This document shows positions 4,026 to 63,030 of a DNA stretch of 64,000 bases, piece after piece. The notes under the pieces were generated by a model. That model searched no databases. It was not told the DNA's origin and worked only from the letters and a program-made list of their open reading frames with translations. Made by a program: the position numbers and the translations under genes. How positions within the stretch are numbered: the stretch's first letter is position 1; every line of letters starts with the position of its first letter. This DNA is from Phaeosaccion multiseriatum (taxonomy: Eukaryota > Protista > Ochrophyta, other classes): positions 558,001 to 622,000 of the forward strand of contig OZ218955.1 in NCBI GenBank assembly GCA_965112735.1, read 5' to 3'.

Positions 4026-5704
4026 ATGGAGCGGGTGATATCCCCAGAGGTAAGAGGTAAATGCCTGTAAATTGTGGATACTTTATCTCATGATAGCACA
4101 CAGACAACGGTACAAACGAGAACGGTGCGAGCGGAGGCGGTGACTTGCGAGAATGAAGCCTCTGATCCGGGGCGGAGTATGCTGCTACACTTCGACACAG
4201 CTGATGCGAGTCGCATTGACCTCAAGCCCTTCGAATGGGATCCCTCTTCTCCACTGCTTCCGAACCCCCCCCCCCCCCCTTTTTACATCAGGCGCGGCGC
4301 CTCTCCCAGGCTCTCCAGAGAAATGAGAACTTCTCAACAGTGAGAGCGCTGGTTAGGAAGCTCGTCGCGAAGCACGGCAAAGCGAGCTTAGATCATCCTA
4401 TTGACGAGGACGGTGGGACGGCTATGATTTGGGCTGCGGGAGAGGACCGGCGGGATGTCGTGGACCTCCTGCTGCAGGAAGGGGCGTCATTCAGTATCGG
4501 GGTAGGAGCGCGGGGGAACACACCATTGACAGAAGCTTGCGTGAGCGGACACGATCACATGGTGAGGCGGCTTTTGGACGCCGGAGCCGCCGTTGACCAA
4601 CCCAATCGCGAAGGGGTGACGCCTCTGCTTATGGCTGCCCAGAATGGGCATTCCACAACTGTGCAGAAGCTCCTGTTGGCGCAGCCCGATGTCAACGCAG
4701 CCGCGACTAGGGGAGTGACTGCGATATGGATGGCCTCTCAAAATGGGCACACCTCCATCGTAGAGCAGCTCATCTCAGCCCAAGCGGACGTGAACAAAGC
4801 CGACGATGAAGGACAAACTCCACTCCTGATAGCGTCTGGACAAGGCCATGTAAGAGTGATACAGCAGCTCATCTCAGCCCAAGCGGACGTGAACAAAGCC
4901 GACGATGAAGGAACAACTCCACTCTGTATGGCTTCTAGACAAGGCCATGTAAGTGTGGTACAGCAGCTCCTCAGGGCCCACGCCGAGATCGAAAAGGCTA
5001 ACAAGCATGGCTTCACCCCGCTTTATGTAGCCTCGGAATTCGGGCATGCCTCTGTTGTGCAGCAGCTTCTCGATGAGCATGCCAGCATAAATGCAAAGAG
5101 TATGGAGGCTGTCACTCCCCTCATGGCCGCGGCTTCCAAAGGACACTTGGCTGTGGTAGAGAAGCTCTTGGCTGCAGGAGCGAACGTCGACTCTATTGGC
5201 CCCGATGGCTGGACTTCTTTTCACTGGGCCGTTCAAGAGGGACACGATGCCGTGGCAAAGCGCCTTCTTGCGGCGGGAGCAAGGGTGGATACAGTGAACA
5301 TCGATGGCGCTTCACCTCTCCACCATGCTGCGAAGAAAGGGCTCGAGGCAATCGTCGCTCGTCTCATCTCTGCCGGATCTCCCATCGATGCCACGACGTC
5401 GATGGGCGCCACCCCTCTACTTGCTGCCATCGACAGAGGCCATCACGGCATTGCCCTGCAGCTCCTCTCGGCCGATGCCTCGGTGGACAAGGCCTTCGCT
5501 GTGGCACGGCGGCTCCAACTGGGCCCAGACATTGAGCAGCGAATCAAGGACGAGGCAGCGGCCTTCTTCCGGTCCCAAAGCGCGTTGGACCTCATGCGTA
5601 GGAGCGACCCGACGTTCGGCAAGGAGAGCAGGACCTTGCCGCTTGAGAGGCCCTGGAGGGTTGGAAGCGAGACATGGGAGAGCATGGCGGAGGAGATGGG
5701 CTGA
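4026..5704 (+). CDS. Ankyrin array copy 1 (11 repeats, ~478 aa)
   Basis: Micro-exon 4026-4049 (MERVISPE) + exon 4292-5704; 33-aa G-x-T-P-L-x-x-A-x-x-x-G-H repeats. Confidence 0.88.
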
Positions 5705-7443
5705 AAGCCCTGAGCGAGGTGGGGCGTGGGTGGAGGACGTGGGAGGGGCGTTTCGAGGGACCTGAAGCCGTGTTGCCGCAGGTAGAGAGACGGGCGAGCA
5801 AGAGGGGAGGGAGAGCGAGGCGGGAGTGTGGACGTGTCGTGTAAGGGCTTAGTGGGCCACTGAGGCAAATGCGCTGTGCGAGGATGGCACCTCATGTCTG
5901 GTCGAATGACTCCAGGATAGGACGGCTGTGCCTCCAAAGCGCCGCCGCGGTAGGATAGGACAGGAGGAACGTGAATGCAACTTTGGCTGGTTGCTCTCCG
6001 CGCTTGACATGATGTCTGTGTGTCTGTGCGGTGTCGTGCCGGATGGCACTTGCAGTAGGACCGCACAGCAGGGGATATAGCCAGCTCGCTCGCTCCGAGT
6101 GGCGGTGACCTCTTCTTGTCAGGCTTTTGCACGTGTGTACTGCCAACTCAGTACGTGGGAAGAAAGTAGCGAAGCAAGGCCTGGAGAAGAGCCGCTTTGT
6201 TTTGCCTAGCCTATGGACTCGTGGCCCATGGGGGCGAGCGGCTTCGGCGACTGGCGCGAAGCAGCTCAAGTGTAGGTCGCAATAGTGCAGTATGATAAGT
6301 CTAAGAAAGGGAATGCAGCAAACCCCCGAACAAGAGATGCTCTGCTGCTGGTTGAGAAGGTGGTGGAATAGTTGCCTTTCCTACCTCTGGGCTGATAACA
6401 TCGCAAGTCCCCCGTGCCCCTACCTTTTTTTTTCTCTAATTCTCTCCTTCCTTATGCCTCTAGCCACCCCTCCCCATATCCCTCCAACTACGTAACTCAG
6501 TGTGCGCCCTTGGTCATAATATCCCTTACCTCCGCCACAAGAAGGCGGCCGAGACCTCCTCCCTCGGCCCCTTTGCTGGTGCTGCTGCAGGTGCTGCTGT
6601 ATCGCCAACTGCTGTGGCTGCTGCGAGGGCTGTGAGTAGGGCGGCGGGCCCCCCGTTTTGAAGGAGGAGTTGCGCGAGTCCGAGGAAGCAGCGGGATCTT
6701 CTCCAAAAGGGTGCGGTGACTGAAGCGACGACGAGTGCAGAGGCTCTGAAAACTGCACATGATAATTAGTATGTAAGATGAAGAGGAGAGAGAGGGGGGG
6801 GGAGGAGGAAGCAAGAAATGGGTTGCCTACGCCTGGGCCATTGACATATTCTGGGCCCCTTCCCTCTGACGCCTCTTCACTTGCAGGCGTGAAAAAAAAA
6901 AGGATTGAATTGAAGGACGGCGAGGGGCAAAGTGCGGCAAGCCGCTGAGAGAGCCCTTCTTCCTCTTTGCGTGTGGTGGTGCGCCCTTGGGGGGCGGGGG
7001 GAGGGGTTCGTCTTGAGACAGGCAGGAGCCGGCTTGATTCTCCCCCGCTCCTCACCGAGCTAGCGCTGCTTTGGCCTCCTTACATAGCGAGTAAAGAGAA
7101 GGGTCGTGATAGGAAGAGTGAGGGACCGCCCTCCTCTCTCTTCGCTTGTAGTGGGACATACCTGGGGGAGGAGGGGCTCCCTTGAGTCAGGCAGGCAGCG
7201 GCCTGCTTGGTTGGTTCCCCCCGGTCCTGACCCAGCTCCAACGCTGCTTTGGCCTCCTACAAGACGTAGAGGAAAGCGGCTGGCGAGAGACAACGCTATT
7301 GGAACGGCCCCTTCCTTCTTCCCTTCTAGTGGGGCGCGCCTGAGGGAGTGGGGAATCGTCTTGAGTCAGGGAGACGCCGGCTTGATTCCCCCCTTTCGCT
7401 GTCCTCCTACTTCAACTTTGGGGGGAAGGAGAGATTTCTCATC

Positions 7444-9026
7444 ATGGAGCCGGTGATATCCCCCGAGGTATGAGCAGAGTGTATATAAATGGTGGATGTT
7501 TTAGCTCATGACAGCACAGAGACGGCGGTACAAAAAGGACGGTGCGAGCGGAGGAGGTGACTCGCGAGAATGAAGCCTCTGATCCGGGGCGGAGTACGCT
7601 GCTACACTTCGACACAGCTGATACGAGTCGCATTGACCTCAAGCCCTTCGAATTGTATCCCTCTTCTCCACTGCTTTTGACCCCCCCCCCCTTTTACCTC
7701 AGGCGTGGCGCCTCTTCCACGCTCTCCAGAGAAATGAGAACTTCTCAACAGTGAGGGCGCTGGTTACGAAGCTCGTCGCGAAGCACGGCAAAATGAGTTT
7801 AGATCATCCTATTGACAAGCACGGTAACACTGCTATGATGTGGGCGGCGGCAGACGACCGGCGGGATGTCGTGGACCTCCTGCTGCAAGAAGGGGCGTCC
7901 TTCAGTATCGGGGGAGGAGCACAGGGGAACACGCCATTGATACAAGCTAGCGCGAGAGGACACCATCACATTGTGAGGCGGCTGTTGGACGTCGGAGCCG
8001 CCATTGACCAACCCAATCCCGAACGTGCGACGCCTCTGCATGTGGCTGCCCAGAATGGGCATTCCACAACTGTGCAGAAGCTCCTGTTGGCGCAGCCCGA
8101 TATCAACGCAGCCGCGACGAGTAGGGGAGTGACTCCGATATGGATGGCCTCTCAGAATGGGCACACCTCCATCGTAGAGCAGCTCATCTCAGCCCAAGCG
8201 GACGTGAACAAAGCCGACAATAGAGGACAAACTCCACTCCGAATAGCGTCAGAAAATGGCCATTGGAGAGTGGTACAGCAGCTCCTCAGCAGGGCCCACG
8301 CCATGATGGAAAAGGCTGATGACGAAGGCCGGACTCCACTTTGTGTAGCCTCTTTCTTTGGGCATGCCTCTGTTGTGCAGCAGCTTCTCGATCACCATGC
8401 CAACATGAATGCCAAGAATGACACGGATACACCTCCACTAATGCTGGCGGCTTTCAAAGGACACTTGGCTGTGGTAGACAAGCTAGCTCGTGGCTGAAGG
8501 AGCGGACGTCGATTCTATTGGCCCCGATGGCTCGACTTCTCTTCAAGGGGCTGCTCAAGAGGGACACGAGGCTGTGACGAAGCGCCTTCTCTCTGCTGGA
8601 GCAAGGGTAGACACAGTGACCAACGATGGCGTAACAGCTCTCTTCCTTGCTGCAAGGAATGGGCACGAGGCAGTCGTCGCTCATCTCATCTCTGCCGGAT
8701 CTCCCATCGATGCCCCGCTTTCGACGGGCTTCACCCCCCTCCTTTCTGCCATCTTCAAAGGCCATCACGGCATTGCACTGCAGCTCCTTTCGGCTGATGC
8801 CTCGGTGGACAAGGCCTTGGATGTGGCACGGCGACACCAACTGGGCCCCGACATTGAGCAGCGAATCAAGGACGAGGCAGCGGCCTTCTTCCGGTCCCAA
8901 AGCGCGTTGGACCTCATGCGTAGGAGCGACCCGACGTTCGGCAAGGAGAGCGGGACCTTGCCGCTGGAGAGGCCATGGAGTGTTGGAAGCGAGACATGGG
9001 AGAACATGGCGGAGGAGATGGGCTGA
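7444..9026 (+). pseudogene. Ankyrin array copy 2 (10 repeats), frameshifted
   Basis: Micro-exon 7444-7467 + exon from 7703; 4-bp duplication (aagctagctcgtggc) near 8485 splits ORFs 7751-8497 and 8490-9026. Confidence 0.82.
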
Positions 9027-10700: not shown

Positions 10701-10733
10701 AACATTGGGGGCAAGGGGAGACTGTTGCCCAGT

Positions 10734-12411
10734 ATGGAGCGGGCGATATCCCCCGAGGTATGAGCTGAGTGTATATAAATGGTAGATGTTTATCTCATGA
10801 CAGCACAGAGACAGCGGTACACACAAGGACGGTACGAGCGGAGGAGGTGACTCGCGAGAATGAAGCCTCTGATCCGGGGCGGAGTACGCTGCAAAGCTTC
10901 AATCCAGCTGATGCGAGTCGCATTGATCTCAAGCCCTTCGAATGGTATCCCTCTTCTCCACTGCTTCCGAACCCCCCCCCCCCCCTTTTTTACATCAGGC
11001 GCGGCGCCTCTCCCAGGCTCTCCAGAGAAATGAGAACTTCTCAACAGTGAGAGCGCTCGTTAGGAAGCTCGTCGCGAAGCACGGCAAAGCGAGCTTAGAT
11101 CATCCTATTGACGAGGACGGTGGGACGGCTATGATTTGGGCTGCGGTAGAGGGCCGGCGGGATGTCGTGGACCTCCTGCTGCAGGAAGGGGCGTCCTTCA
11201 GTATCGGGGGAGGAGAGCCGGGGAGCACGCCATTGATTGAAGCTAGCGCGAGAGGACACGATCACATGGTGAGGCGGCTGTTGGACGTCGGAGCCGCCGT
11301 TGACCAACCCAATCCCGAAGGGATGACGCCTCTGCTTATGGCTGCCCAGAATGGGCATTCCACAACTGTGCAGAAGCTCCTGTCGGCGCAGCCCGATGTC
11401 AACGCAGCCGCGACTAGGGGAGTGACTCCGATATGGATGGCCTCTCAGAATGGGCACACCTCCATCGTAGAGCAGCTCATCTCAGCCCAAGCGGACGTGA
11501 ACAAAGCCAACGATGAAGGAAGAACTCCACTCCTGATAGCGTCTGGACAAGGCCATGGGAGAGTGGTACAGCAGCTCATCTCAACCGAAGCGGACGTGAA
11601 CAAAACCGACAATAGAGGAAGCACTCCACTCCAGAATGCGTCTGCCGAAGGCCATGTAAGAGTGGTACAGCAGCTCCTCAGGGCCCACGCCGAGATCGAG
11701 AAGGCTGATGACGGAGGCTGGACTCCACTTTTTGTAGCCTCTATGCTCGGGCGTGCCTCTGTCGTGCAGCAGCTTCTCGATGAGCATGCCAGCATAAATG
11801 CAAAGAGTGTGGAGGCTGTCACTCCCCTCATTGCGGCGGCTGGGGGCGGACACTTGGCTGTGGTAGACAAGCTCTTGGCCGCAGGAGCGGACGTCAATTC
11901 TATTGGCCCAAATGGCTGGACTTCTCTTCACGCGGCCGCTCAACTGGGACACGACGCTGTGATGAAGTGCCTTCTCTCTGCGGGAGCAAGGGTGGACACG
12001 GTGACCAACGATGGCGTAACAGCTCTCTTCCTTGCTGTAAGGAGTGGGCACGAGGCAGTCGTCGCTCATCTCATCTCTGCCGGATCTCCCATCGATGCTC
12101 CGATTTCGATGGGCTCTACCCCTCTCCTTGCTGCCATCATCAATGGCCATCACGGCATGGCACTGCAGCTCCTCTCGGCTGATGCCTCGGTGGACAAGGC
12201 CTTCGCTGAGGCACGGCGACACCAACTGGGCACAGACATTGAGCAGCGAATCAAGGACGAGGCAGCGGCCTTCTTCCGGTCCCAAAGCGCGTTGGACCTC
12301 ATGCGTAGGAGCGACCCGACGTTCGGCAAGGAGAGCAGGACCCTGCCGCTGGAGAGGCCCTGGAGTGTTGGAAGCGAGACATGGGAGAGCATGGCGGAGG
12401 AGATGGGCTGA
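10734..12411 (+). CDS. Ankyrin array copy 3 (11 repeats, ~478 aa)
   Basis: Micro-exon 10734-10757 + exon 10999-12411. Confidence 0.88.
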
Positions 12412-14122: not shown

Positions 14123-15801
14123 ATGCAGCGGGTGATATCCTCCGAGGTATGAGGTGAATGTATGTTATTGCTTGTGAATACTTAATCTCATGACAGCACA
14201 AAGACAGCGGTGCAAACGGGAACGGTGCGAGCGGAGGAGGTGACTTGCGGGAATGAAGCCCCTTATCCGGCGGGGTGGAGTACGCTGCTAAGCTTCGATC
14301 CAGCTGATACCAGTCGCACTGACCTCAAGCCCTTCGAATTGTATCCCTCTTCTCCACTGCTTTTGAACCCCCCTCCCTCTTACATCAGGCACAGCGCCTC
14401 TGCCAGGCTCTCCGGAGAAATCAGAACTTCTCAACAGTGAGAGCGCTCGTTAGGAAGCTCGTCGCAAAGCATGGCAAAGCGAGCTTAGATCATCCTATTG
14501 ACGAGGACGGTGGGACGGCTATGATTTGGGCTGCGGTAGAGGGCCGGCGGGATGTCGTGGACCTTCTGCTGCAGGAAGGGGCGTCCTTCAGTATCGGGGG
14601 AGGAGAGCCGGGGAGCACGCCATTGATTGAAGCTAGCGCGAGAGGACACGATCACATGGTGAGGCGGCTGTTGGACGTCGGAGCCGCCGTTGACCAACCC
14701 AATCCCGAAGGGGCGACGCCTCTGCTTATGGCTGCCCAGAATGGGCATTCCACAACTGTGCAGAAGCTCCTGTCGGCGCAGCCCGATGTCAACGCAGCCG
14801 CGACTAGGGGAGCGACTCCGATATGGATGGCCTCTCAGAATGGGCACACCTCCATCGTAGAGCAGCTCATCTCAGCCCAAGCGGACGTGAACAAAGCCAA
14901 CGATGAAGGAAGAACTCCACTCCTGATAGCGTCTGGACAAGGCCATGGGAGAGTGGTACAGCAGCTCATCTCAACCGAAGCGGACGTGAACAAAGCCGAC
15001 AATAGAGGAAGCACTCCACTCCAGAATGCGTCTGCCGAAGGCCATGTAAGAGTGGTACAGCAGCTCCTCAGGGCCCACGCCGAGATCGAGAAGGCTGATG
15101 ACGGAGGCCGGACTCCACTTTTTGTAGCCTCTATGCTCGGGCGTGCCTCTGTCGTGCAGCAGCTTCTCGATCACCATGCCAACATGAATACAAAGAGTAT
15201 TGAGGATGTGACTCCCTTCATTGCGGCGGCTATGAATGGACACTTGGCTGTGGTAGACAAGCTCTTGGCTGCAGGAGCGGACGTCAATTCTATTGGCCCT
15301 GGTGGCTCGACTTCTCTTCAAGGGGCCGCTCAAGAGGGACGCGATGCCGTGACGAAGCGCCTTCTTGCGGCGGGAGCAAGGGTGGACACAGTGACAAACG
15401 ATGGTGTAACAGCTCTCTTCCTTGCTGCAAGGAATGGGTACGAGGCAGTCGTCGCTCGTCTCATCTCTGCCGGATCTCCCATCGATGCCCCGCTTTCGAC
15501 GGGCTCCACCCCCCTCCTTTCTGCCATCTTCAAAGGCCATCACGGCATTGCACTGCAGCTCCTCTCGGCTGATGCCTCGGTGGACAAGGCCTTCGCTGTG
15601 GCACGGCGGCTCCAACTGGGCCCAGACATTGAGCAGCGAATCAAGGACGTGGCAGCGGCCTTCTTCCGGTCCCAAAGCGCGTTGGACCTCATGCGTAGGA
15701 GCGACCCGACGTTCGGCAAGGAGAGCGGGACCTTACCGCTGGAGAGGCCCTGGAGTGTTGGAAGCGAGACATGGGAGAGCATGGCGGAGGAGATGGGCTG
15801 A
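14123..15801 (+). CDS. Ankyrin array copy 4 (11 repeats, ~478 aa)
   Basis: Micro-exon 14123-14146 (MQRVISSE) + exon 14389-15801. Confidence 0.88.
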
Positions 15802-17720: not shown

Positions 17721-19312
17721 ATGGAGCGGGCGATATCCCCCGAGGTATGAGCTGAGTGTATATAAATGGTGGAGGTTTATATCATGACAGCACAGAGACA
17801 GCGGTACAAACGAGAGCGGTGCGAGCGGAGGAGGTGACTCGCGAGAATGAAAGCCTCTGATCCGGCGGGGTGGAGTACGCTTCTACACTTCGACACAGCT
17901 GATGCGAGTCGCATTGACCTCAAGCCCTTCGAATTGTATCCCTCTGTATCCCTCTTCTCCACGCACTGCTTCCGAACCCCCCTCCCTCTTTACATCAGGC
18001 TCGGCGCCTCTGCCAGGCTCTCCAGAGAAATGAGAACTTCTCAACAGTGAGAGCGCAGGTTAGGAAGCTCGTCGCGAAGCACGGCAAAGCGAGCTTAGAT
18101 CATCCTATTGACGAGGACGGTGTGACGGCTATGATTTGGGCTGCGGCAGACGACCGGCGGGATGTCGTGGACCTCCTGCTGCAGGAAGGGGCGTCCTTCA
18201 GTATTGGGGGAGGAGAGCCGGGGGGCACGCCATTGGTAGAAGCTAGCGCGAGAGGACACGATCACATGGTGAGGCGGCTGTTGGACGCCGGAGCCGCCGT
18301 TGACCAACCCAATCGCGAAGGGGTGACGCCTCTGCTTATGGCTGCCGAGAATGGGCATTCCACAACTGTGCAGAAGCTCCTGTTGGCGCAGCCCGATGTC
18401 AACGCAGCCGGGGGTACGGGAATGACTCCGATATGGATGGCCTCTCAGAATGGGCACACCTCCATCGTAGAGCAGCTCATCTCAGCCCAAGCGGACGTGA
18501 ACAAAGCCGACGATAGAGGAAGAACTCCACTCCTGATGGCTTCTAGACAAGGCCATGGGAGAGTGGTACAGCAGCTCCTCAGGGCCCACGCCGAGATCGA
18601 GAAGGCTATCAACGATGGCTTCACCCCGCTTGTTGCAGCCTCTTCATTCGGGCATGCCTCTGTTGTGCAACAGCTTCTCGATGAGCATGCCAGCATAAAT
18701 GCAAAGAGTATGGCGGATGTCACTCCCCTCATGGTGGCGGCTATGAATGGACACTTGGCTGTGGTAGACAAGCTCTTGGCTGCAGGAGCGGACGTCAATT
18801 CTATTGGCCCCGATGGCTCGACTTCTCTTCAAGGGGCCGCTCAAGAGGGACACGATGCCGTGACGAAGCGCCTTCTTGCGGCGGGAGCAAGGGTGGACAC
18901 AGTGACAAACGATGGTGTAACAGCTCTCTTCCTTGCTGCAAGGAATGGGCACGAGGCAGTCGTCGCTCATCTCATCTCTGCCGGATCTCCCATCGACATC
19001 GAGACCACGAGCGGCCTGACCCCTCTACTTACTGCCATCTTCGAAGGCCATAACGGCATTGCACTGCAGCTCCTCTCGGCTGATGCCTCGGTGGACAAGG
19101 CCTTCGCTGGGGCACGGCGGCTCCAACTGGGCCCAGACATTGAGCAGCGAATCAAGGACGAGGCAGCAGCCTTCTTCCGGTCCCAAAGCGCGTTGGACCT
19201 CATGCGTAGGAGCGACCCGACGTTCGGCAAGGAGAGCAGGACCTTGCCGCTGGAGAGGCCCTGGAGTGTTGGAAGCGAGACATGGGAGAGCATGGCGGAG
19301 GAGATGGGCTGA
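17721..19312 (+). CDS. Ankyrin array copy 5 (10 repeats, ~445 aa)
   Basis: Micro-exon 17721-17744 + exon 17999-19312. Confidence 0.88.
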
Positions 19313-21066: not shown

Positions 21067-22643
21067 ATGGAGCGGGCGATATCCCCCGAGGTATGAGCTG
21101 AGTGTATATAAATGGTAGATGTTTATCTCATGACAGCACAGAGACAGCGGTACAAACGAGAACGGTACGAGCGGAGGAGGTGACTCGCGATAATGAAGCC
21201 TCTGATCCGGGGCGGAGTACGCTGCAAAGCTTCAATCCAGCTGATGCGAGTCGCATTGATCTCAAGCCCTTCGAATGGTATCCCTCTTCTCCACTGCTTC
21301 CGAACCCCCCCCCCCCTTTTTTACATCAGGCGCGGCGCCTCTCCCAGGCTCTCCAGAGAAATGAGAACTTCTCAACAGTGAGAGCGCTCGTTAGGAAGCT
21401 CGTCGCGAAGCACGGCAAAACGAGTTTAGATCATCCTATTGACAAGCACGGTAACACTGCTATGATGTGGGCGGCGGCAGACGACCGGCGGGATGTCGTG
21501 GACCTCCTGCTGCAAGAAGGGGCGTCATTCAGTATCGGGGGAGGAGCGCGGGGGAACACACCATTGACAGAAGCTTGCGTGAGAGGACACGATCACATGG
21601 TGAGGCGGCTGTTGGACGCCGGAGCCGCCGCTGACCAACCCAATCGCGAAGGGGCGACGCCTCTGCTTATGGCTGCCGAGAATGGGCATTCCACAACTGT
21701 GCAGAAGCTCCTGTTGGCGCAGCCCGATGTCAACGCAGCCGCGAGTACGGGAGTGACTCCGATATGGGTGGCCTCTCAGAATGGGCACACCTCCATCGTA
21801 GAGCAGCTCATCTCAGCCCAAGCGGACGTGAACAAAGCCGACGATGAAGGAACAACTCCACTCCTGATAGCGTCAGTACTAGGCCATGGGAGAGTGGTAC
21901 AGCAGCTCCTCAGGGCCCACGCCGAGATCGAGAAGGCTATCAACGATGGCTTCACCCCGCTTGTTGCAGCCTCTTCATTCGGGCATGCCTCTGTTGTGCA
22001 ACAGCTTCTCGATGAGCATGCCAGCATAAATACAAAGAGTATGGAGGCTGTCACTCCCCTCATGGGCGCGGCTGGGAGCGGACACTTGGCTGTGGTAGAC
22101 AAGCTCTTGGCTGCAGGAGCGGAGGTCGATTGTATTAGCCGCGATGGCTTGACTTCTCTTCAAGGGGCTGCTCAAGAGGGACACGAGGCTGTGACGAAGC
22201 GTCTTCTCTCTGCTGGAGCAAGGGTAGACACAGTGACCAACGATGGCGTAACAGCTCTCTTCCTTGCTGCAAGGAATGGGCACGAGGCAGTCGTCGCTCA
22301 TCTCATCTCTGCCGGATCTCCCATCGATGCCCCGCTTTCGACGGGCTTCACCCCCCTCCTTTCTGCCATCTTCAAAGGCCATCACGGCATTGCACTGCAG
22401 CTCCTCTCGGCTGATGCCTCGGTGGACAAGGCCTTCGCTGTGGCACGGCGGCTCCAACTGGGCCCCGACATTGAGCAGCGAATCAAGGACGAGGCAGCGG
22501 CCTTCTTCCGGTCCCAAAGCGCGTTGGACCTCATGCGTAGGAGCGACCCGACGTTCGGCAAGGAGAGTAAGACCTTACCGCTGGAGAGGCCCTGGAGTGT
22601 TGGAAGCGAGACATGGGAGAGCATGGCGGAGGAGATGGGCTGA
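21067..22643 (+). CDS. Ankyrin array copy 6 (10 repeats, ~445 aa)
   Basis: Micro-exon 21067-21090 + exon 21330-22643. Confidence 0.88.
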
Positions 22644-41428: not shown

Positions 41429-41513
<85 letters not shown>

Positions 41514-46638: not shown

Positions 46639-46683
<45 letters not shown>

Positions 46684-49600: not shown

Positions 49601-51068
49601 ACTCTCTTTCTCTCTGCATCTCACACCTGCTCTCTCTCACTCATTCTCTTTCTCTCTCTCTGCATCTCACACCTGCTCTCTCCCACCCATTCTCTTTCTC
49701 TCTCTCTGCATCTCACACTTGCTCTCTCTCACTCACTCTCTTTTTCTCTGTCGCTCTGTGTGTGTGTTGCTCTTCTCTGTCCCCGCCACTCTCCCTCGTT
49801 CCTATGCGCACGCACGCACTCACGCGCAGCACGAGGCCGCCGCGGCAGCAGCAGCAAGGGCTGCGGCTACCCCCCCCAAGGCCGCCCATCCCCCCCTGCC
49901 TCACACTCCCCTTCCTACTCCACCCCTTCCTTCCTCTCGACTCGGAAATCACCCCCCTACTCCTCCTCCTCCTCACCGTCCACCTACGCCCCCCCCGGTG
50001 GCGGCTCTGGGGGCTGTAGCGGCCGAGGATGAGAGAGAGAGACGCGAGGATGCTTTGGGCTCTCTGGGATCCCCTTCCACGCCGCCGCTGGCCTCCACTG
50101 GAGGAGGTGGAGCAGCAGGAGCAGCAGGAGCAGTGGCAGGAGGAGGAGGACCAGGAGGACCAGGAGGAGGCACAGCAGTAGGAGGAGGGGGAGGAGGAGG
50201 AGGAGGAGGAGGAGGAGGAGGAGGAGGAGGAGGAGGAGGAGGAGGGGCTGGCGGGGTTGCGTCTTCGGGCAATCGAGGGGTGCGATGGCCCTCTTCTCGG
50301 AGCGAAGACAGAGAGGACGAGCAGGCCATCGCCACGGCCTACGGCTTTGGCAACCAGCAGCACAGGTTCACAGGTGGTAATCAGAGCAAAATCATAGATG
50401 GCGTGGGGGGGATGCCGAGCAAGGGAGGAGAGGACGTGTCTTCCCCTCGGGGGGATGCCCTCCGCGTGCTTCGGCAGCAGCAGGAACAGCAGCGACGGCA
50501 GCAGATGGCGGTGCTTCAGAACCCGCCTCGGCCGTACGACCTTCGTCACCAGAAGCAAGAGCAGCAGCAACAGAAACTGGAGAAAGGAAAGCACGGGCGG
50601 CAAGGGGGGCAAGGGGGGCAGTTGGTGGTACAGCCTCAGCCAGTGCGAGGTGCAGAGCCGCGTGCTGTGGTGGTTTCTCCTCGCCCCAGCCAGTCACGGA
50701 AACAGACGCAAGGCCAGGGGCAAGGCCTGGCTGAGGGGCCGGCTCAGGGTGGGGCAGGCCGTGATGCCCAAAGCGCTGGGGCAATTGCTACGCCCATGAG
50801 TGCTCGCGTGCAGTTTTCAGAGCCTCTCCACTCGTCGCTACAGTCACTGCACCCTTTTGGGGAAGATGCCGCTGCTTCCTCGGACTCGCGCAACTCCTCC
50901 TTCAAAAAGGGGGGCCTGCCGCCCTACTCGCAGCCCTCGCCGCAGCTACAGCAGTTGGCGATACAGCAGCACCTGCAGCAGCAGCAACGAGGCAGAGGGA
51001 GGAGGTCTCGACCGTCCTCTCGCGGCGGAGATAAGGGAGATGATGATCAAGGGTGCACACTGAGTTAA
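44474..51068 (+). CDS. Ankyrin-repeat + fibronectin type III domain protein with low-complexity termini
   Basis: Thirteen phase-compatible exons (44474-44799, 45055-45220, 45499-45598, 45717-45793, 46054-46110, 46284-46625, 46888-47071, 47506-47610, 47804-47910, 48247-48296, 48638-48749, 48992-49247, 49830-51068). Ankyrin motifs WSLLHLAAGCG and GADPNVLTDGGYTPLMGACLVG..LLLRAGAD; FN3 motif TIIHNLTPGKSYSFRVSLVAEIG. Confidence 0.75.
47072..47190. repeat. (GTGA)n intronic microsatellite
   Basis: Direct reading; starts at the splice donor. Confidence 0.9.
48303..48360. repeat. (GGA)n intronic microsatellite
   Basis: Direct reading. Confidence 0.95.
49480..49745. repeat. ~40-bp pyrimidine-rich intronic minisatellite
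   Basis: Repeated tctctgcatctcacac(c/t)tgctctctctcactcactctctttc units. Confidence 0.85.
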
Positions 51069-51849
51069 GAGGGATATGGAGAGGGGTGGGTAGAGGCATA
51101 CGGAAGGAGAGACTTAGAGGCGTATGGTATGGGCACGGGGGACTTGCGATGTATTCAGCCCAGAGGTACAAAAGGCAACTTTTCCACCACCTTCTCAACC
51201 AGCAGCAGAGCATCTCTTGTTCGGGGGTTTGCTGCATTCCTTTCTTAGACTAGACTATCACACTGAACTATTGTGCCTACATTTGAGCTGCTGCGCGCCA
51301 GTCGCCTAAGCCGCTCGCCCCCATGGGCCACGAGTCCATAGGCCAGGCAAAGCAAAGCCTCTCTTCTCCAGGCCTTGCTTCGCTACTTTCTTCCCACGTA
51401 CTGAGTTGGCAGTACACACGTGCAAAAGCCTGACGAGAAGAGCTCACGGCCACTCGGAGCGGGCGAGCTGGCTGTATCCCCTGCTGCTGCGGTCATACTA
51501 CAAGTGCCATCCGGCACGACAACGCACAGACACACAGACACATGTCAAGCACGGAGAAGCAACACACCAAGCTCGTGTTTCCCATTCCTCCTATCCTGTC
51601 CTACCGCGGCGGCGCTTTGGAGGCACAACAGTCCTATTCTGGAGTCATTCGACCAGACATGAGGTGCCATCCTCGCACAGCACATTTGCCTCAGTGGGCC
51701 ACTAAGCCCTTCCACGGCACGTCCACACTCCCTCCTCGCTCTCCCTTCCCTCTCGCTCGCCCGTCTCTCTACCTTCGGCAACACGGCTTCAGGTCCCTCG
51801 AAATGCCCCTCCCACGTCATCCACCCACCCCCCACCTCTCTCAGGTCTT

Positions 51850-53429
51850 TCAGCTCATCTCCTCCGCCATGCTCTCCCATGTCTCGCTTCCAACACTCCA
51901 GGGCCTCTCCAGCGGCAAGGTCCTGCTCTCCTTGCCGAACGTCGGGTCGCTCCTACGCATGAGGTCCAACGCGCTTTGGGACCGGAAGAAGGCCGCTGCC
52001 TCGTCCTTGATTCGCTGCTCAATGTCGGGGCCCAGTTGGTGTCGCCTTGCCCCAGCGAAGGCCTTGTCCACCGAGGCATCAGCCGAGAGGAGCTGCAGTG
52101 CAATGCCTTGATGGCCATTGATGATGGCAGCAAGGAGAGGGGTGCCGCCGCTCGACGTCGTGGCATCGATGGGAGATCCGGCAGAGATGAGACGAGCGAC
52201 GATTGCCTCGAGCCCTTTCTTCGCAGCATGGTGGAGAGGTGAAGCGCCATCGATGTTCACTGTGTCCACCCTTGCTCCCGCCGCAAGAAGGCGCTTCGCC
52301 ACGGCATCGTGTCCCCCTTGAACGGCCCAGTGAAAAGAAGTCATCAAGCCATCGCGGCCAATAGAATCGACGTCCGCTCCTACAGCCAAGAGCTTCTCTA
52401 CCACAGCCAAGTGTCCTTTGGAAGCCGCGGCCATGAGGGGAGTCATATCCTCAATACTCTTTGTATTCATGTTGGCATGCTCATCGAGAAGCTGCTGCAC
52501 GACAGAGGCACGCCCGAGCATAGAGGCTACAAAAAGCGGGGTGCAGCCATCCTTGTTAGCCTTTTCGATCTCGGCGTGGGCCCTGAGGAGCTGCTGTATC
52601 ACTCTCCCATGGCCTTCTCTAGAAGCCATACAGAGTGGAGTTGTTCCTTCATCGTCGGCTTTGTTCACGTCCGCTTGGGCTGAGATGAGCTGCTCTACGA
52701 TGGAGGTGTGCCCATTCTGAGAGGCCATCCATATCGGAGTCACTCCCCTACTCGCGGCTGCGTTGACATCGGGCTGCGCCAACAGGAGCTTCTGCACAGA
52801 TTTGGAATGCCCATTCTCGGCAGCCACAAGCAGAGACGTCGCCCCGCGGAGATTGGGTTGGTCAGCGGCGGCTCCGGCGTCCAACAGCCGCCTCACCATG
52901 TGATGGTGTCCTCTCACGCAAGCTTCTGTCAATGGTGTGTTCCCCCGCGCTCCTCCCCCGATACTGAATGACGCCCCTTCCTGCAGCAGGAGGTCCACGA
53001 CATCCCGCCGGTCCTCTCCCGCAGCCAAAATCATAGCCGTCCCACCGTCCTCGTCAATAGGATGATCTAAGCTCGCTTTGCCGTGCTTCGCGACGAGCTT
53101 CCTAACCAGCGCTCTCACTGTTGAGAAGTTCTCATTTCTCTGGAGAGCCTGGGAGAGGCGCCGCGCCTGATGTAAAAAGGGGGGGGGGGGGGTTCGGAAG
53201 CAGTGGAGAAGAGGGATACCATTCGAAGGGCTTGAGATCAATGCGACTCGCATCAGCTGGATTGAAGCTTTGCAGCGTACTCCGCCCCGGATCAGAGGCT
53301 TCATTCTCGCGAGTCACCTCCTCCGCTCGTACCGTCCTTGTGTGTACCGCTGTCTCTGTGCTGTCATGAGATAAACATCCACCATTTATATACCTCAGCT
53401 CATACCTCGGGGGATATCGCCCGCTCCAT
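51850..53429 (-). CDS. Ankyrin array copy 11 (10 repeats, ~446 aa)
   Basis: Micro-exon 53429-53406 + exon 53166-51850; ends EEMS*. Confidence 0.88.
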
Positions 53430-55147: not shown

Positions 55148-56732
55148 TCAGCCCATCTCCTCCGCCATGCTCTCCCATGTCTCGCTTCCAACACTCCAGG
55201 GCCTCTCCAGCGGCAAGGTCCTGCTCTCCTTGCCGAACGTCGGGTCGCTCCTACGCATGAGGTCCAACGCGCTTTGGGACCGGAAGAAGGCTGCTGCCAC
55301 GTCTTTGATTCGCTGCTCAATGTCTGGGCCCAGTTGGAGCCGCCGTGCCCCAGCGAAGGCCTTGTCCACCGAGGCATCAGCCGAGAGGAGCTGCAGTGCA
55401 ATGCCGTGATGGCCTCTGTCGATGGCAGCAAGTAGAGGGGTGGCGCCCATCGACGCCGTGGCATCGATGGGAGATCCGGCAGAGATGAGACGAGCGACGA
55501 TTGCCTCGTGCCCTCTCTGCGCAGCATAGCGGAGAGGTGAAGCGCCGTCGATGTCCACTGTGTCCACCCTTGCTCCCGCCGCGAGAAGGCGCTTCGCCAC
55601 GGCATCGTGTCCGTCTTGAACGGCCCAGTGAAGAGAAGTCAAGCCAGCGCGGCTAATACAATGGACCTCCGCTCCTGCAGCCAAGAGCTTCTCTACCACA
55701 GCCAAGTGTCCGCTCCCAGCCGCGGCCATGAGGGGAGTGACACCCTTCATACTCATTGTATTTATGCTGGCATGCTCATCGAGAAGCTGCTGCACAACAT
55801 AGGCATGCCCGAGGAAAGAGGCCATATGAAGTGGAGTCCGGCCTTGGTCATCAGCCTTGTCCACCTTGGCGTGGGCCCTGAGGAGCTGCTGTACCACTCT
55901 TACACGGCCCTTTGCTGACGCTATCAGGAGTGGAGTTCTTCCTCCATTTTCGGCTTTGTCCACGTCCGCTTGGGCTGAGATGAGCTGCTCTACGATGGAG
56001 GTGTGCCCATTCTGAGAGGCCACCCATATCGGAGTCACTCCCGTACTCGCAGCAGCTGCGTTGACATCGGGCTGCGCCAACAGGAGCTTCTGCACAGTTG
56101 TGGAATGCCCCTTCTGGGCAGCCATAAGCAGAGGCGTCGTCCCGTCGCGATTGGGTTGGTCAACGGCGGCTCCGACGTCCAACAGCCACGGCACCAAGTG
56201 ATCGTGTCCGCTCACGCAAGCTTCAATCAATGGCGTATTCCCCAACCCTCCTACCCCGATATTACTGAACAATGACGCCCCTTCCTGCAGCAGGAGGTCC
56301 ATGACATCCCGCCGGCCCTCTCCCGCAGCCCAAATCATAGCAGTGTTTCCGTGCTTGTCAATAGGATGATCTAAGCTTGCTTTGCCGTGCTTCGCGACGA
56401 GCTTCCTAACCAGCGCTCTCACTGTTGAGAAGTTCTGATTTCTCCCGAGAGCCTGGCAGAGGCGCTGCGCCTGATGGGAGAGGGAGGGGGGTTCAAAAGC
56501 AGTGGAGAAGAGGGATACAATTCGAAGGGCTTGAGGTCAATGCGACTCGCATCAGCTGTGTCGAAGTGTAGCAGCGTACTCCACCCCGCCGGATCAGAGG
56601 CTTCATTCTCGCGAGTCACCTCCTCCGCTCGCACCGTCCTTTTTGTACCGCCGTCTCTGTGCTGTCATGAGCTAAAACATCCACCATTTATATACACTCC
56701 GCTCATACCTCGGGTGATATCACCGGCTCCAT
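55148..56732 (-). CDS. Ankyrin array copy 12 (10 repeats, ~448 aa)
   Basis: Micro-exon 56732-56709 (MEPVISPE) + exon 56470-55148. Confidence 0.88.
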
Positions 56733-57301
56733 GATGAGAAATCTCTCCTTCCCCCCAAAGTTGAAGTAGGAGGACAGCGAAAGGGGGGAATCAAGCCGGC
56801 GTGACTCAAGACGATTCCCCACTCCATCAGGCGCGCCCCACTAGAAGGGAAGAAGGAAGGGGCCGTTCCAATAGCGTTGTCTCTCGCCAGCCGCTTTCCT
56901 CTACGTCTTGTAGGAGGCCAAAGCAGCGCTGGAGCTGGGTCAGGACCGGGGGGAACCAACCAAGCAGGCCGCTGCCTGACTCAAGGAAACCCCTCCTCCC
57001 CCAGGTATGTCCCACTACCAGCGAAGAGAGAGGAGGGCGGTCCCTCGCTCTTCCTATCACGACCCTTCTCTTTACTCGCTGTGTATGGAGGCCAAAGCAG
57101 CGCTAGCTCGGTGAGGAGCGGGGGAGAATCAAGCCGGCTCCTGCCTGTCTCAAGACGAACCCCTTCCCCCGCCCCCCAAGCGCGCACCACCACACGCAAA
57201 GAGGAAGAAGGGCTCTCTCAACGGCTTGCCGCACTTTGCCCCTCGCCGTCCTTCAATTCAATTGTGTCAGAGGGAAGGGGCCCAGAATATGTCAATGGCC
57301 C

Positions 57302-57585
57302 AGGCGTAGGCAGCCCATTTCTTGCTTCGGCCCAGGGGGAGGGGATATCTACGCTCATCTCTCATATTCATCTTGCATATTATTTATCGTGTGCAGTTTT
57401 CAGAGCCTCTGCACTCGTCGCTTCAGTCACCGCACCCTTTGGAAGGCGTAGGCAGCCCATTTCTTGCTTCGGCCCAGGGGGATGGGATATGTACGCTCAT
57501 CTCTCATATTCATCTTACATATTAATTATCGTGTGCAGTTTTCAGAGCCTCTGCACTCGTCGCTACAGTCACCGCACCCTTTGGA
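57302..57585. repeat. 142-bp local tandem duplication in unit spacer
   Basis: aggcgtaggcagcccatttc...gcaccctttgga at 57302-57443 and 57444-57585. Confidence 0.85.
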
Positions 57586-58555
57586 GAAGATGTCGCTGCT
57601 TCCTCGGACTCGCGCAACTCCTCCTTCAAGACAGGGGGCCCGCCGCCCTGCTCGCAGCCCTCGCCGCAGCTACAGCAGTTGGCGATACAGAAGCACCTGC
57701 AGCAGCAGCAACGGGGCCGAGGGAGGAGGTCTCGGCCGTCCTCTCGCGGCGGAGATAAGGGAAACGATGATCAAGGGTGCACACTGAGTTGAATTTTTGA
57801 GCTAGAGGCATAAGGAAGGAGAGGCTTAGAAGCGTATGGTAGGGGCATGCGGGACGTGCGATGTATTCAGCCCAGAGGTACGAAAGGCAATTTATTCCAC
57901 CACCCTTTCAACAGCGCAACAGAGCATCTCTTGTGTGAAGGCTTGCTGCATTCCCTTTCTTAGACTTATCATTTTGCTCCTACACTTGAGCTGCTCCGCG
58001 CCAGTCGCCTAAGCCGCTCGCCCCCATGGGCCACGAGTCCATAGGCTAGGCAAAGCAAAGCCTCTCTTCTCCGGGCCTTGCTTCGCTACTTTCTTCCCAC
58101 GTACTGAGATGGCAGTACACACGTGCAAAAGCCTGACAAGAAGAGCTCACCGCCACTCGGAGCGGACGAGCCGGCTATATGCCCTGCTGCTGCGGTCATA
58201 GTACAAGTTCCATCCTGCACGACAACGCACAGACACACAGACAACATGTCAAGCACGGAGAAGCAACCAGCCAAGGTCGTATTTCCCATTCCTCCTATCC
58301 TATCCTACCGCGGCGGTGCTTTGGAGGCACAGCAGTCCTATCCTCGAGTCATTCGACCAGACATGAGGTGCCATCCACGCACAGCGCATTTGCCTCAGTG
58401 GCCCACTAAGCCCTTACGCGACACGTCCACACTCCCTCCTCGCTCTCTTCCCTCTCTCTTGCTCGCCCGTCTCTCTACCTGCGGCAACACGGCTTCAGGT
58501 CCCTCGAAACGCCCCTCCCACATACTCCACCCACCCCCCACCTCGCTCAGGTCTT

Positions 58556-60133
58556 TCAGCCCATCTCCTCCGCCATGCTCTCCCATGTCTCGCTTCCAAC
58601 ACTCCAGGGCCTCTCCAGCGGCAAGGTCCTGCTCTCCTTGCCGAACGTCGGGTCGCTCCTACGCATGAGGTCCAACGCGCTTTGAGATCGGAAGAAGGCT
58701 GCTGCCTCGTCCTTGATTCGCTGCTCAATGTCGGGGCCCAGTTGGAGCCGCTGTGCCCCAGCGAAGGCCTTGTCCACCGAGGCATCAGCCGCGAGGAGCT
58801 GAAGTGCAGTGCCGTGATGGCCATTGATGATGGCAGCAAGGAGGGGGGTCAGGCCGCTCGACGTCGGGGCATCGATGGGAGATCCGGCAGAGATGAGATG
58901 AGCGACGACTGCCTCGTGCCCATTCTCCGCCGCAAGGTGGAGAGGTGAAGCGCCGTCGATGTCCACTGTGTCCACCCTTGCTCCCGCCGCGAGAAGGCGC
59001 TTCGCCACGGCATCGTGTCCGTCTTGAACGGCCCAGTGAAGAGAAGTCAAGCCATCGCGGCTAATACAATGGACCTCCGCTCCTGCAGCCAAGAGCTTCT
59101 CTACCACAGCCAAGTGTCCGCTCCCAGCCGCGGCCATAAGGGGAGTGACACCCTTCATACTCATTGTATTTATGCTGGCATGCTCATCGAGAAGCTGCTG
59201 CACAACAGAGGCATGCCCGAGGAAAGAGGCCATATGAAGTGGAGTCCGGCCTTGGTCATCAGCCTTGTCCACCTTGGCGTGGGCCCTGAGGAGCTGCTGT
59301 ACCACTCTTACACGGCCCTTTGCTGACGCTATCAGGAGTGGAGTTCTTCCTCCATTTTCGGCTTTGTCCACGTCCGCTTGGGCTGAGATGAGCTGCTCTA
59401 CGATGGAGGTGTGCCCATTCTGAGAGGCCATCCATATCGGAGTCACTCCCGTACTCGTAGCTGCGTTGACATCGGGCTGCGCAGACAGGAGCTTCTGCAC
59501 AGTTGTGGAATGCCCGATCTCGGCAGCCATCAGCAGAGGCGTCGCCCCTTCACGATTGGGTTGGTCAATGGCGGCTCCGACGTCCAACAGCCACGGCACC
59601 AAGTGATCGTGTCCGCTCACGCAAGCTTCAATCAATGGCGTGGTCCCCAACGCTCCTACCCCGATATTACTGAAGGACGCCCCTTCCTGCAGCAGGAGGT
59701 CCACGACATCCCGCCGGCCCTCTCCCGCAGCCCAAATCATAGCAGTGTTTCCGTGCTTGTCAATAGGATGATCTAAGCTTGCTTTGCCGTGCTTCGCGAC
59801 GAGCTTCCTAACCAGCGCTCTCACTGTTGAGAAGTTCTGATTTCTCCCGAGAGCCTGGCAGAGGCGCTGCGCCTGATGGGAGAGGGAGGGGGGTTCAAAA
59901 GCAGTGGAGAAGAGGGATACAATTCGAAGGGCTTGAGGTCAATGCGACTCGCATCAGCTGTGTCGAAGTGTAGCAGCGTACTCCACCCCGCCGGATCAGA
60001 GGCTTCATTCTCGAGTCACCTCCTCCGCTCGCACCGTTCTCGTTTGTACCGTTGTCTGTATGCTATCATGAGATTAAGTATCCATGAACTACACGCATTT
60101 GCCTCATACCTCTGGGGATATCACCCGCTCCAT
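58556..60133 (-). CDS. Ankyrin array copy 13 (10 repeats, ~446 aa)
   Basis: Micro-exon 60133-60110 (MERVISPE) + exon 59872-58556. Confidence 0.88.
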
Positions 60134-62890: not shown

Positions 62891-62951
<61 letters not shown>

Positions 62952-62993
62952 AATGTACACATACATACATTCATACATACATACGTACACAAT

Positions 62994-63030
<37 letters not shown>

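What the first reader, a model, noticed from the sequence alone, without database searches (positions are those of the whole stretch)
4026..60133. Natural DARPin-like library: 13 ankyrin paralogs with fixed scaffold and hypervariable binding surface
Seen: the helix-2/linker framework (e.g. SIVEQLISAQADVNKA, QQLLRAHA, LISAGSPID) is near-identical in all copies. Differences cluster around the G-x-TPL hairpin and in helix 1. Penultimate repeat: NIDGASPLHHAAKKGL / TNDGVTALFLAARNGH / DKKGDSPLHHAAKSGH / DIDGASPLRYAAQRGH / DIDGASPLHLAAENGH. Last repeat: SMGATPLLAAIDRGH / STGFTPLLSAIFKGH / TSGLTPLLTAIFEGH / WNGATPLLGAIVRGH / SSGGTPLLAAIINGH. Established: these are the concave-face positions that contact targets in ankyrin proteins and that are randomised in DARPin libraries. 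Inference: a diversifying intracellular recognition family (virus or pathogen sensing, or self/non-self), possibly undescribed in this lineage.
Basis: partly seen in the sequence, partly recalled or inferred. Interest (0 to 1): 0.92.

Follow-up and report, generated by a model that had tools for sequence, protein, structure and literature searches.

The report
Fast-evolving ankyrin gene array
Thirteen neighbouring copies of one ankyrin-repeat gene in an algal genome keep the same scaffold and tail, but their predicted binding groove changes two to three times faster than silent sites and is shuffled between copies, the signature of a recognition-protein repertoire whose targets and expression are still unknown.

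Summary
The window holds 13 paralogous ankyrin (ANK) genes in about 3.4-kb duplication units, ten on the + strand and three on the - strand.

- **Where they differ:** amino-acid differences concentrate at repeat positions 2, 3, 5, 9, 10, 13 and 14, in the beta-hairpin and inner helix. The outer helix, linkers, N-cap and a 72-aa C-terminal tail are nearly invariant.
- **Selection:** at the pre-defined DARPin positions (2, 3, 5, 13, 14, 33), dN/dS is 1.9 by pairwise NG86 (bootstrap 1.4-2.7). Maximum likelihood gives 2.0-3.9 with block-specific trees (summed test p 2e-5). The framework gives 0.5-0.7 and the tail 0.15-0.25.
- **Shuffling:** copies are mosaics (PHI p<0.001, Rmin 57), so gene conversion or unequal crossover moves cassettes between them.
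- **Gene model:** an 8-9-codon first exon plus a 109-124-nt intron gives nine intact genes. Two copies (c2, c9) have frameshifts in the body and two (c5, c8) in exon 1.
- **Tail:** it has no relative in any database searched.

No RNA data could be found, so expression and any immune role are untested. The closest precedent is the positively selected ANK domains of fungal NLRs. The scan has noted the same kind of array elsewhere in this genome, and two follow-ups reached similar verdicts.

The parts
4153..5704 (+). c1: ANK gene, 11 repeats. Putative exon 1 is 4153-4176, the intron 4177-4291 and exon 2 4292-5704. It also reads as a single 489-aa ORF from the ATG at 4235.
7570..9026 (+). c2: ANK copy, 10 repeats, with a frameshift near 8483 (pseudogene).
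   Evidence: Short-read contigs covering 8388-8551 match without difference.
10860..12411 (+). c3: ANK gene, 11 repeats, intact.
14253..15801 (+). c4: ANK gene, 11 repeats, intact under the two-exon model.
17847..19312 (+). c5: ANK copy, 10 repeats. The body ORF is intact, but putative exon 1 has a +1-nt insertion.
21193..22643 (+). c6: ANK gene, 10 repeats, intact under the two-exon model.
23964..26286 (+). (AGGG)n microsatellite of 2.3 kb that interrupts the array between c6 and c7.
27259..28810 (+). c7: ANK gene, 11 repeats, intact under the two-exon model.
30644..32109 (+). c8: ANK copy, 10 repeats. The body ORF is intact, but putative exon 1 has a +1-nt insertion.
33952..35397 (+). c9: ANK copy, 10 repeats, with a frameshift near 34409 (pseudogene).
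37220..38771 (+). c10: ANK gene, 11 repeats, intact. It is the last unit of the + sub-array and has no neighbour-gene fragment downstream.
50804..51849 (+). The last ~265 coding nt of the convergent neighbour gene (stop codon ends at 51068) plus the spacer. This 1.05-kb piece follows 12 of the 13 copies at 87-92% identity, so it is one end of the duplication unit.
51850..53304 (-). c11: ANK gene, 10 repeats, intact. It sits in the original context next to the real neighbour gene.
55148..56606 (-). c12: ANK gene, 10 repeats, intact under the two-exon model.
58556..60008 (-). c13: ANK gene, 10 repeats, intact under the two-exon model.
5486..5701 (+). Example (c1) of the invariant non-ANK C-terminal module, 72 aa long. 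It has two helices followed by a disordered acidic and aromatic tail that ends ...ERPW.VGSETWESMAEEMG.

Best explanation
This is a recently amplified, still recombining family of soluble ankyrin-repeat binding proteins.

Each gene encodes a short N-cap of two helices, 10 or 11 ANK repeats, two C-terminal helices, and an invariant disordered acidic/aromatic tail.

Shown:
- A 3.4-kb unit, made of the gene plus the 3' end of its convergent neighbour, was copied 12 times from the c11 locus into two convergent sub-arrays.
- The copies exchange segments by gene conversion or unequal crossover. One such event between repeats 5 and 6 removed a repeat.
- Replacement changes accumulate two to three times faster than silent changes at the hairpin and inner-helix positions that line the ANK groove. 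The outer helix, linkers, caps and tail are under purifying selection.

Inferred:
- Each paralog binds a different ligand through its groove and couples it to one common partner through the constant tail, as an adaptor or receptor repertoire.
- The ligands are themselves fast-evolving, most likely proteins of viruses, parasites or selfish elements.
- Copies with a broken frame still serve as sequence donors for conversion.
For: - **Array and unit structure:**
- **Where the variation lies:** it is confined to repeat positions 2, 3, 5, 9, 10, 13 and 14. In the AF2 model, helix 1 spans positions 7-14 and helix 2 spans 17-25. The variable residues therefore sit in the hairpin and on one face (i, i+1, i+4, i+5) of the inner helix.
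- **NG86 at the a priori DARPin positions:** dN 0.367 against dS 0.195, omega 1.88 (bootstrap 1.37-2.69). This dN is 3.0 times the gene-wide dS.
- **Tree-free variant counts:** omega about 2.0, p 0.0025. For the nine intact copies alone, omega is 2.4, p 0.0014.
- **Maximum likelihood (GY94):** omega 2.83, 2dlnL 27.6. With block-specific trees, omega is 2.6, 3.9 and 2.0; summed LRT p 2e-5.
- **Purifying selection elsewhere:** omega is 0.5-0.7 in the framework, 0.28 in the C-terminal helices and 0.15 in the tail (p 0.001).
- **Indels:** 8 of 10 coding indels are in frame, against 27 of 114 in intergenic DNA (p 6e-4).
- **Silent divergence:** it falls with distance from the selected codons, 0.195 > 0.117 > 0.074, as expected under diversifying selection with homogenising conversion.
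- **Recombination:** PHI p<0.001, Rmin 57, and a mosaic allele matrix.
- **Origin of the variants:** they are not copied from other repeats of the family and show no base-specific mutation bias.
Against: - No RNA evidence exists. The runs that hold the locus cover intergenic DNA as well, so they are DNA runs.
- There are no orthologues and no population data.
- Changes private to a single copy at the binding positions give omega of only about 1.2, so ongoing positive selection is not shown.
- Four of the 13 copies are compromised.
- Framework omega of 0.5-0.7 is fairly relaxed.
- Recombination can inflate likelihood-ratio tests.
- The ligand class and the partner of the tail are pure inference.
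- The tail matches no known motif family.
Confidence: 0.65

Rival explanations
1. The same adaptor family, but diversified to bind different endogenous partners rather than non-self. For example, the copies could be substrate receptors or scaffolds for one cellular machine, subfunctionalised after duplication.
For: The architecture of a variable ANK domain plus a constant C-terminal module also fits ANK-SOCS and ANK-F-box substrate receptors. The protein-atlas search gave weak leads to PRANC and SOCS-box ANK clusters, at scores of 0.77-0.79, which is chance level. Nothing in the window ties the family to infection.
Against: Endogenous partners rarely drive omega of 2-4 across all blocks of repeats together with continuing exchange of cassettes. 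No SOCS-box, F-box or PRANC match was found in Pfam.
Confidence: 0.2
2. There is no adaptive diversification. Gene conversion homogenises the scaffold, and unconstrained surface codons simply drift and escape conversion.
For: Surface positions of any ANK protein are the least constrained. Silent divergence is also raised at the variable codons. Private changes give omega of about 1.2.
Against: Drift cannot push dN above dS. Omega at the a priori positions exceeds 1 by three methods, and the bootstrap interval of 1.37-2.69 excludes 1. This dN, 0.37, exceeds the typical intergenic divergence between homologous flanks (mismatch fraction about 0.03-0.21).
Confidence: 0.08
3. The array is a decaying set of untranscribed duplicates, that is, mostly pseudogenes.
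For: Two copies have body frameshifts and two have exon-1 frameshifts. Read as single exons, only c1, c3 and c11 have an ATG before the ANK domain. No RNA evidence was found.
Against: - There is no stop codon in 13 x about 460 codons.
- In-frame indels are strongly enriched.
- Omega is 0.15-0.28 in the tail and C-terminal helices.
- All four substitutions in the 8-9-codon first exon are synonymous, and its only other indel is 3 nt.
Confidence: 0.05
4. The mosaic paralogs are an assembly artefact, chimeric consensus sequences of a collapsed repeat.
For: Tandem repeats of 85-96% identity are hard to assemble.
Against: Short-read contigs from three runs lie on 3300-9200, mostly at 99% identity or better. 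They reproduce c2's frameshift region without difference. However, these runs come from the sample that was probably used for the assembly.
Confidence: 0.02

Closest known systems
ANK, TPR and WD sensor domains of fungal NOD-like receptors (Dyrka et al. 2014, PMC4986451; Podospora hnwd genes, PMC2873952)
   Same: Positive selection acts at positions on the concave ANK surface (inner helices and beta-hairpin). There is also repeat-number polymorphism, and exchange of repeats within and between paralogs (concerted evolution).
   Different: There is no NACHT/NB-ARC domain and no N-terminal effector domain here. Repeats within one protein are not highly similar to each other, at 16-27 differences per 48 nt, except for R5/R6. 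Diversity lies between 13 tandem paralogs rather than between repeats or alleles. The output module is an orphan C-terminal tail.
Synthetic ANK libraries: DARPins and ANK-N5C (PMC4308713, which randomises positions 2, 3, 5, 10, 13 and 33)
   Same: A capped ANK solenoid with a fixed framework. Diversity sits at positions 2, 3, 5, 10, 13 and 14. The Foldseek top hits include extended DARPins (6mol_A, TM 0.73/0.79).
   Different: The diversity is natural, 10-11 repeats long, and shuffled by recombination. Position 33 is not variable and position 9 is. The family has its own N-cap and a long C-terminal extension.
ANK proteins with a constant C-terminal ligase-docking box: poxvirus ANK/PRANC and animal ASB (ANK-SOCS box)
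   Same: A variable ANK recognition domain is followed by a short conserved C-terminal module. Both occur as multigene families.
   Different: No PRANC, F-box or SOCS-box match was found. The resemblance is architectural only.
Clustered LRR receptor genes of plants (NLR/RLP clusters) and other diversifying solenoid receptors
   Same: Tandem arrays, unequal crossover and gene conversion, positive selection on solvent-exposed residues of the repeats, and pseudogene members.
   Different: The scaffold is ANK rather than LRR, and there is no signalling domain of a known type.
Ankyrin-B and ankyrin-R membrane-binding domains (5y4f, 1n11)
   Same: These are the best structural matches to the solenoid: TM 0.73/0.85, rmsd 2.4 A over 386 columns.
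   Different: Sequence identity is about 30%. They are different proteins, with no relation beyond the ANK fold.

Membership tests
Ankyrin-repeat superfamily (Pfam Ank, Ank_2) | Tandem 33-residue repeats that match the Pfam ANK models and fold as a helix-hairpin-helix solenoid. | tested here: met
   Ank scores E 7e-71 over 11 stretches and Ank_2 scores E 5e-71. The AF2 model has mean pLDDT 86 with 11 helix pairs. Foldseek hits are ANK solenoids.
Natural counterpart of a DARPin-type library | An invariant framework, with diversity restricted to the groove positions 2, 3, 5, 13, 14 and 33. | tested here: met
   Five of the six positions are among the seven most variable. Position 33 is not variable, and positions 9 and 10 are variable in addition.
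Natural counterpart of a DARPin-type library | Diversity produced or kept by selection for binding, that is, omega above 1 at those positions. | tested here: met
   Omega is 1.9-3.9 by NG86, variant counts and maximum likelihood.
Fungal-type NLR (STAND) receptor | A central NACHT or NB-ARC nucleotide-binding domain. | tested here: not met
   Pfam finds only ANK families. The N- and C-terminal parts have no hit at E<=1.
Fungal-type NLR (STAND) receptor | High internal conservation of the repeats within one protein. | tested here: not met
   The minimum distance between repeat positions is 16-27 of 48 nt, except for R5/R6.
ANK-SOCS box (ASB) or ANK-PRANC/F-box substrate receptors | A C-terminal SOCS box or F-box-like domain. 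| tested here: not met
   No Pfam hit for residues 396-489. No PDB sequence hit. No relative among 1.84 billion representative proteins.
Diversity-generating retroelement or other targeted mutator | Base-specific (adenine) mutagenesis of a variable region copied from a template. | tested here: not met
   All four bases vary at 55-84% of sites in the variable codons. The variants are not copies of other repeats. The window was not searched specifically for a reverse transcriptase.
Expressed multigene family | Transcripts from the copies. | not testable with these tools
   Only DNA-like runs hold the locus, and the single read-laying run was used on them.

The most novel reading that the evidence does not exclude
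The array may be one arm of a genome-wide, ANK-based intracellular recognition system in this alga. Several independent ANK gene arrays have been noted elsewhere in the same genome, some with F-box-like or BTB heads. In this reading, each array couples a hypervariable groove to its own constant output module. Here that module would be an orphan acidic/aromatic tail, which might dock onto an autophagy, chaperone or ligase component. The frame-broken copies would act as silent donor cassettes for gene conversion, as in antigenic-variation or chicken immunoglobulin systems.
Probability: 0.2. Interest if true: 0.85.

Novelty: new variant of a known kind. Interest (0 to 1): 0.6.

Why it matters
Diversifying solenoid receptors are well documented for LRRs in plants and animals, and for the ANK/TPR/WD domains of fungal NLRs. 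A stand-alone ANK protein family with a lineage-specific constant tail, amplified in tandem and positively selected on its groove, would be a different solution to the same problem, in a photosynthetic protist where innate immunity is almost unexplored.

It gives a concrete, testable set of candidate recognition proteins: nine intact paralogs, defined variable positions and a defined constant tail. It also gives a natural data set on which ANK surface positions tolerate and reward variation, which is relevant to binder engineering.

The value of this single locus is limited by the lack of expression, ligand and population data. Similar arrays also recur elsewhere in the genome.

Tried and rejected
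- **RNA evidence.** Both run searches returned only runs that also cover intergenic DNA. A second-sample run held only short conserved coding pieces. No conclusion on transcription is possible.
- **Close homologues.** The full-length search is swamped by generic ANK proteins at 44% identity or less. The tail alone has no hit in any of these:
  - the 5.8-billion-protein index
  - Pfam
  - PDB sequences
  - metagenome or viral contigs
  - 1.84 billion representative proteins, where the three hits are repetitive proteins matched by chance
- **Protein-atlas search of the tail.** Scores were 0.85 or below, at chance level.
- **Out-of-register conversion between repeats** as the source of variants: rejected.
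- **DGR-like, base-specific mutagenesis:** rejected.
- **Single-exon gene model with the ATG at 4235:** judged less likely than the two-exon model.
  - Only c1 and c3 keep that ATG in frame.
  - The 19 codons after it evolve at omega of about 1.5 and carry frame-breaking length changes, including a C-run of 6-15.
  - The upstream mini-exon shows only synonymous changes.
- **N-myristoylation of c1 (MGSLFS):** judged incidental for the same reasons.
- **Identifying the organism:** not attempted, because no suitable conserved full-length protein lies in the window.


Full report
**What is there**

The window (58% G+C, intron-rich eukaryotic DNA) contains 13 copies of one ankyrin-repeat gene.

- Ten copies are on the + strand (c1-c10, 4.2-38.8 kb) and three on the - strand (c11-c13, 51.9-60.0 kb).
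- The gene is not duplicated alone. A whole unit of about 3.4 kb is duplicated at 84-96% DNA identity.
- A 1.05-kb piece follows 12 of the 13 copies at 87-92% identity, with homology starting sharply at 50804-50809. It consists of the last ~265 coding nt of the convergent neighbour gene (stop at 51068) plus the spacer up to c11's stop.
- c11 therefore sits in the original context, and the other units derive from that arrangement.
- A 2.3-kb (AGGG)n microsatellite interrupts the array between c6 and c7.

**The protein**

- Pfam finds only ANK families. The first 58 and last 94 residues have no match.
- An AlphaFold2 model of c1, made with the 11 copies that have no body frameshift as its alignment, has mean pLDDT 86. 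It shows two N-terminal helices, 11 helix pairs, two C-terminal helices (417-457) and a disordered end (458-489).
- Foldseek places it with ankyrin-B/R repeats (5y4f, TM 0.73/0.85, rmsd 2.4 A) and with extended DARPins.
- There is no membrane segment and no hydrophobic N-terminus, so the protein is probably soluble and intracellular.
- Five copies have 11 repeats and eight have 10. The single repeat of c11 at that place differs by 1 nt in 48 from c1's repeat 6. The loss therefore looks like unequal crossover between the near-identical repeats 5 and 6.

**Check of the observation**

- I put every repeat in the 33-residue register of the DARPin consensus (G at 4, TPL at 6-8).
- Mean entropy is 0.9-1.6 bits at positions 2, 3, 5, 9, 10, 13 and 14, against 0-0.4 bits at positions 4, 6-8, 11-12 and 15-33; position 1 is intermediate at 0.74.
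- In the model, helix 1 spans positions 7-14 and helix 2 spans 17-25. The variable residues therefore lie in the hairpin and on one face of the inner helix, while the outer helix and linker are constant.
- DARPin libraries randomise 2, 3, 5, 13, 14 and 33 (my own knowledge of Binz et al. 2003). The ANK-N5C library randomises 2, 3, 5, 10, 13 and 33, and its authors show that these form one continuous binding surface (PMC4308713).
- The match is close. Position 33 is not variable here, and position 9 is.

**Is it selection?** I fixed the test set beforehand as the six DARPin positions in all repeats (66 codons).

| Method | Binding positions | Framework |
|---|---|---|
| Pooled pairwise NG86 | dN 0.367, dS 0.195, omega 1.88 (column bootstrap 1.37-2.69) | omega 0.55 |
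| Tree-free count of distinct codon and amino-acid variants | 130 replacement vs 18 silent, omega about 2.0, p 0.0025 | 84 vs 61 |
| GY94 codon model (IQ-TREE), one tree | omega 2.83, 2dlnL 27.6 against omega = 1 | omega 0.72 |
| GY94 with separate trees for three blocks of repeats | omega 2.6, 3.9, 2.0 (p 0.007, 0.0003, 0.033; summed p 2e-5) | omega 0.45-0.82 |

- The binding-position dN is 3.0 times the gene-wide dS of 0.121.
- The variant counts differ between binding and framework positions at Fisher p 8e-9.
- The signal holds for the nine intact copies alone (omega 2.4, p 0.0014).
- The block-specific trees were used to limit the effect of recombination.
- Neutral yardsticks agree with dS. 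Fourfold sites show 0.28 variants per site and homologous intergenic DNA 0.24-0.55, against 0.84 per replacement site at the binding positions.
- Silent divergence declines away from the selected codons: 0.195, then 0.117 in the interleaved framework codons, then 0.074 in helix 2 and the linker. This pattern is expected when conversion homogenises the scaffold and selection preserves old variants at the groove.
- Caveat: changes private to one copy give omega of only about 1.2 at these positions. Selection in the very recent past is therefore not demonstrated.

**Are the genes alive?**

- The framework (p 5e-5), the C-terminal helices (omega 0.28) and the disordered tail (omega 0.15, p 0.001) are under purifying selection.
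- There is no stop codon in any copy.
- Of ten coding indel events, eight are multiples of three, against 27 of 114 in intergenic DNA (p 6e-4).
- Two copies have frameshifts: c2 near 8483 and c9 near 34409. Short-read contigs from three runs span c2's site without difference.

**The 5' end**

- Read as single exons, only c1 and c3 have the ATG at the aligned start. c11 uses an upstream ATG, and nine copies have ATT in place of the start codon.
- The 19 codons after that ATG evolve at omega of about 1.5. They contain a C-run of 6-15 and a 14-nt insertion, both of which break the frame.
- A two-exon model fits better:
  - exon 1, ATGAAGCCYCTKATCCGS(CGG)GGYGGA, which encodes MKPLIR(R)GG
  - a GTACGC/GTATGC donor
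  - a 109-124-nt intron ending in the pyrimidine run and CAG
  - exon 2, starting at ARRL...
- This model is in frame in 11 copies. All four substitutions seen in exon 1 are synonymous, and its only other length change is 3 nt. c5 and c8 carry a +1 insertion there.
- Likely donors of a neighbouring gene are of a similar type, GTGCGT and GTGGGA.
- This model is inference, about 65% likely. It needs RNA data.
- Under it, nine copies are intact and four are compromised.

**Shuffling**

- No two copies encode the same protein.
- Each shares individual repeat cassettes with different partners. For example, c1 shares R10 with c11, R5 with c7 and c10, and R3 with c8.
- PHI is 0.34 against a permuted mean of 0.58 (p<0.001), and Rmin is 57 across 1.4 kb.
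- Upstream and downstream flanks give different nearest neighbours.
- The variants are not borrowed from other repeat positions of the family.
- No base is preferentially mutated, so a targeted mutator is not indicated.

**Relatives**

- Full-length searches return only generic ANK proteins at 44% identity or less.
- The constant tail has no relative in any collection searched.
- The tail is the most conserved part of the protein, so it is the best candidate for a common output or docking module. This agrees with note s1-338506.
- Its W-E-S-M and terminal acidic motifs invite ideas such as Atg8 docking or a TPR clamp, but these are speculation.

**Interpretation**

- The data support a repertoire of intracellular ANK binders whose groove is under diversifying selection and is reshuffled among tandem paralogs, all wired to one constant tail.
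- That the ligands are non-self is the most economical reading of omega of 2-4, but it is untested.
- The closest described case is the ANK domain of fungal NLRs. There, positively selected and polymorphic sites map to the inner helices and hairpin, and repeats are exchanged within and between genes (PMC4986451). This family has no NOD domain and no internally conserved repeats, so it is not a member of that family.
- No paper describing such a stand-alone ANK array in algae turned up in three searches. That is not proof of absence.

**Context from the scan**

About 30 notes in this genome describe DARPin-like ANK arrays on other DNA. Two follow-ups (s1-326288, s1-326282) reached similar verdicts. 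I did not test those loci. They suggest the phenomenon is genome-wide, which raises the interest of the whole and lowers the uniqueness of this locus.

Noticed in passing
window 23964-26286: A 2.3-kb, nearly pure (AGGG)n microsatellite (98% matches, about 580 units) lies inside the array between c6 and c7. It is G-rich on the + strand, so it could form G-quadruplexes and might be a hotspot for breakage or recombination.
   Followed up: no
window 4262-4281 and the equivalent place in each copy: A C-run followed by a T-run just upstream of the proposed 3' splice site varies from 6 to 15 C between copies. If the intron were retained, its length would decide which upstream ATG is in frame with the ANK body.
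   Followed up: partly
window 3413 / 6864: Contigs of three runs from one sample join 3413 to 6864, skipping 3450 bases (one unit, c1). The shorter side of the joint is only 26 letters. This may be a repeat-induced path rather than a haplotype that lacks c1.
   Followed up: no
window 62280-63191 (-): A different, much more divergent ANK gene fragment, 30-37% identical to the array proteins. It is embedded in (ACAT)n and (TA)n-type low-complexity sequence, and its post-ANK region aligns weakly with the family's C-terminal helices.
   Followed up: partly
window 41700-43100 (-): Exons of an intron-containing gene (peptides ...[16 protein letters not shown] and ...[34 protein letters not shown]) with likely donors GTGCGT and GTGGGA. 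The introns are full of (GT)n and (TC)n repeats. It lies between the two convergent ANK sub-arrays.
   Followed up: partly
window 57302-57585: A 142-bp segment is tandemly duplicated (96% identity) in the spacer between c12 and c13.
   Followed up: no
about 235 nt upstream of the aligned start in c2, c3, c5, c6, c8, c9, c11 and c12 (for example, window about 10710 for c3): A TATATAAA motif is conserved in eight copies and degenerate in c1, c4, c7, c10 and c13. It may be a core promoter element, which would imply unequal expression among the copies.
   Followed up: no
run X5 (second sample) on window 4742-4772, 5458-5496, 5666-5704 and 8157-8187: A small run from another sample of the same organism label holds only short, highly conserved coding pieces of the family. 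One 878-nt contig diverges on both sides of the last 39 coding bases. This suggests further paralogs, or a divergent strain that carries the same tail.
   Followed up: no
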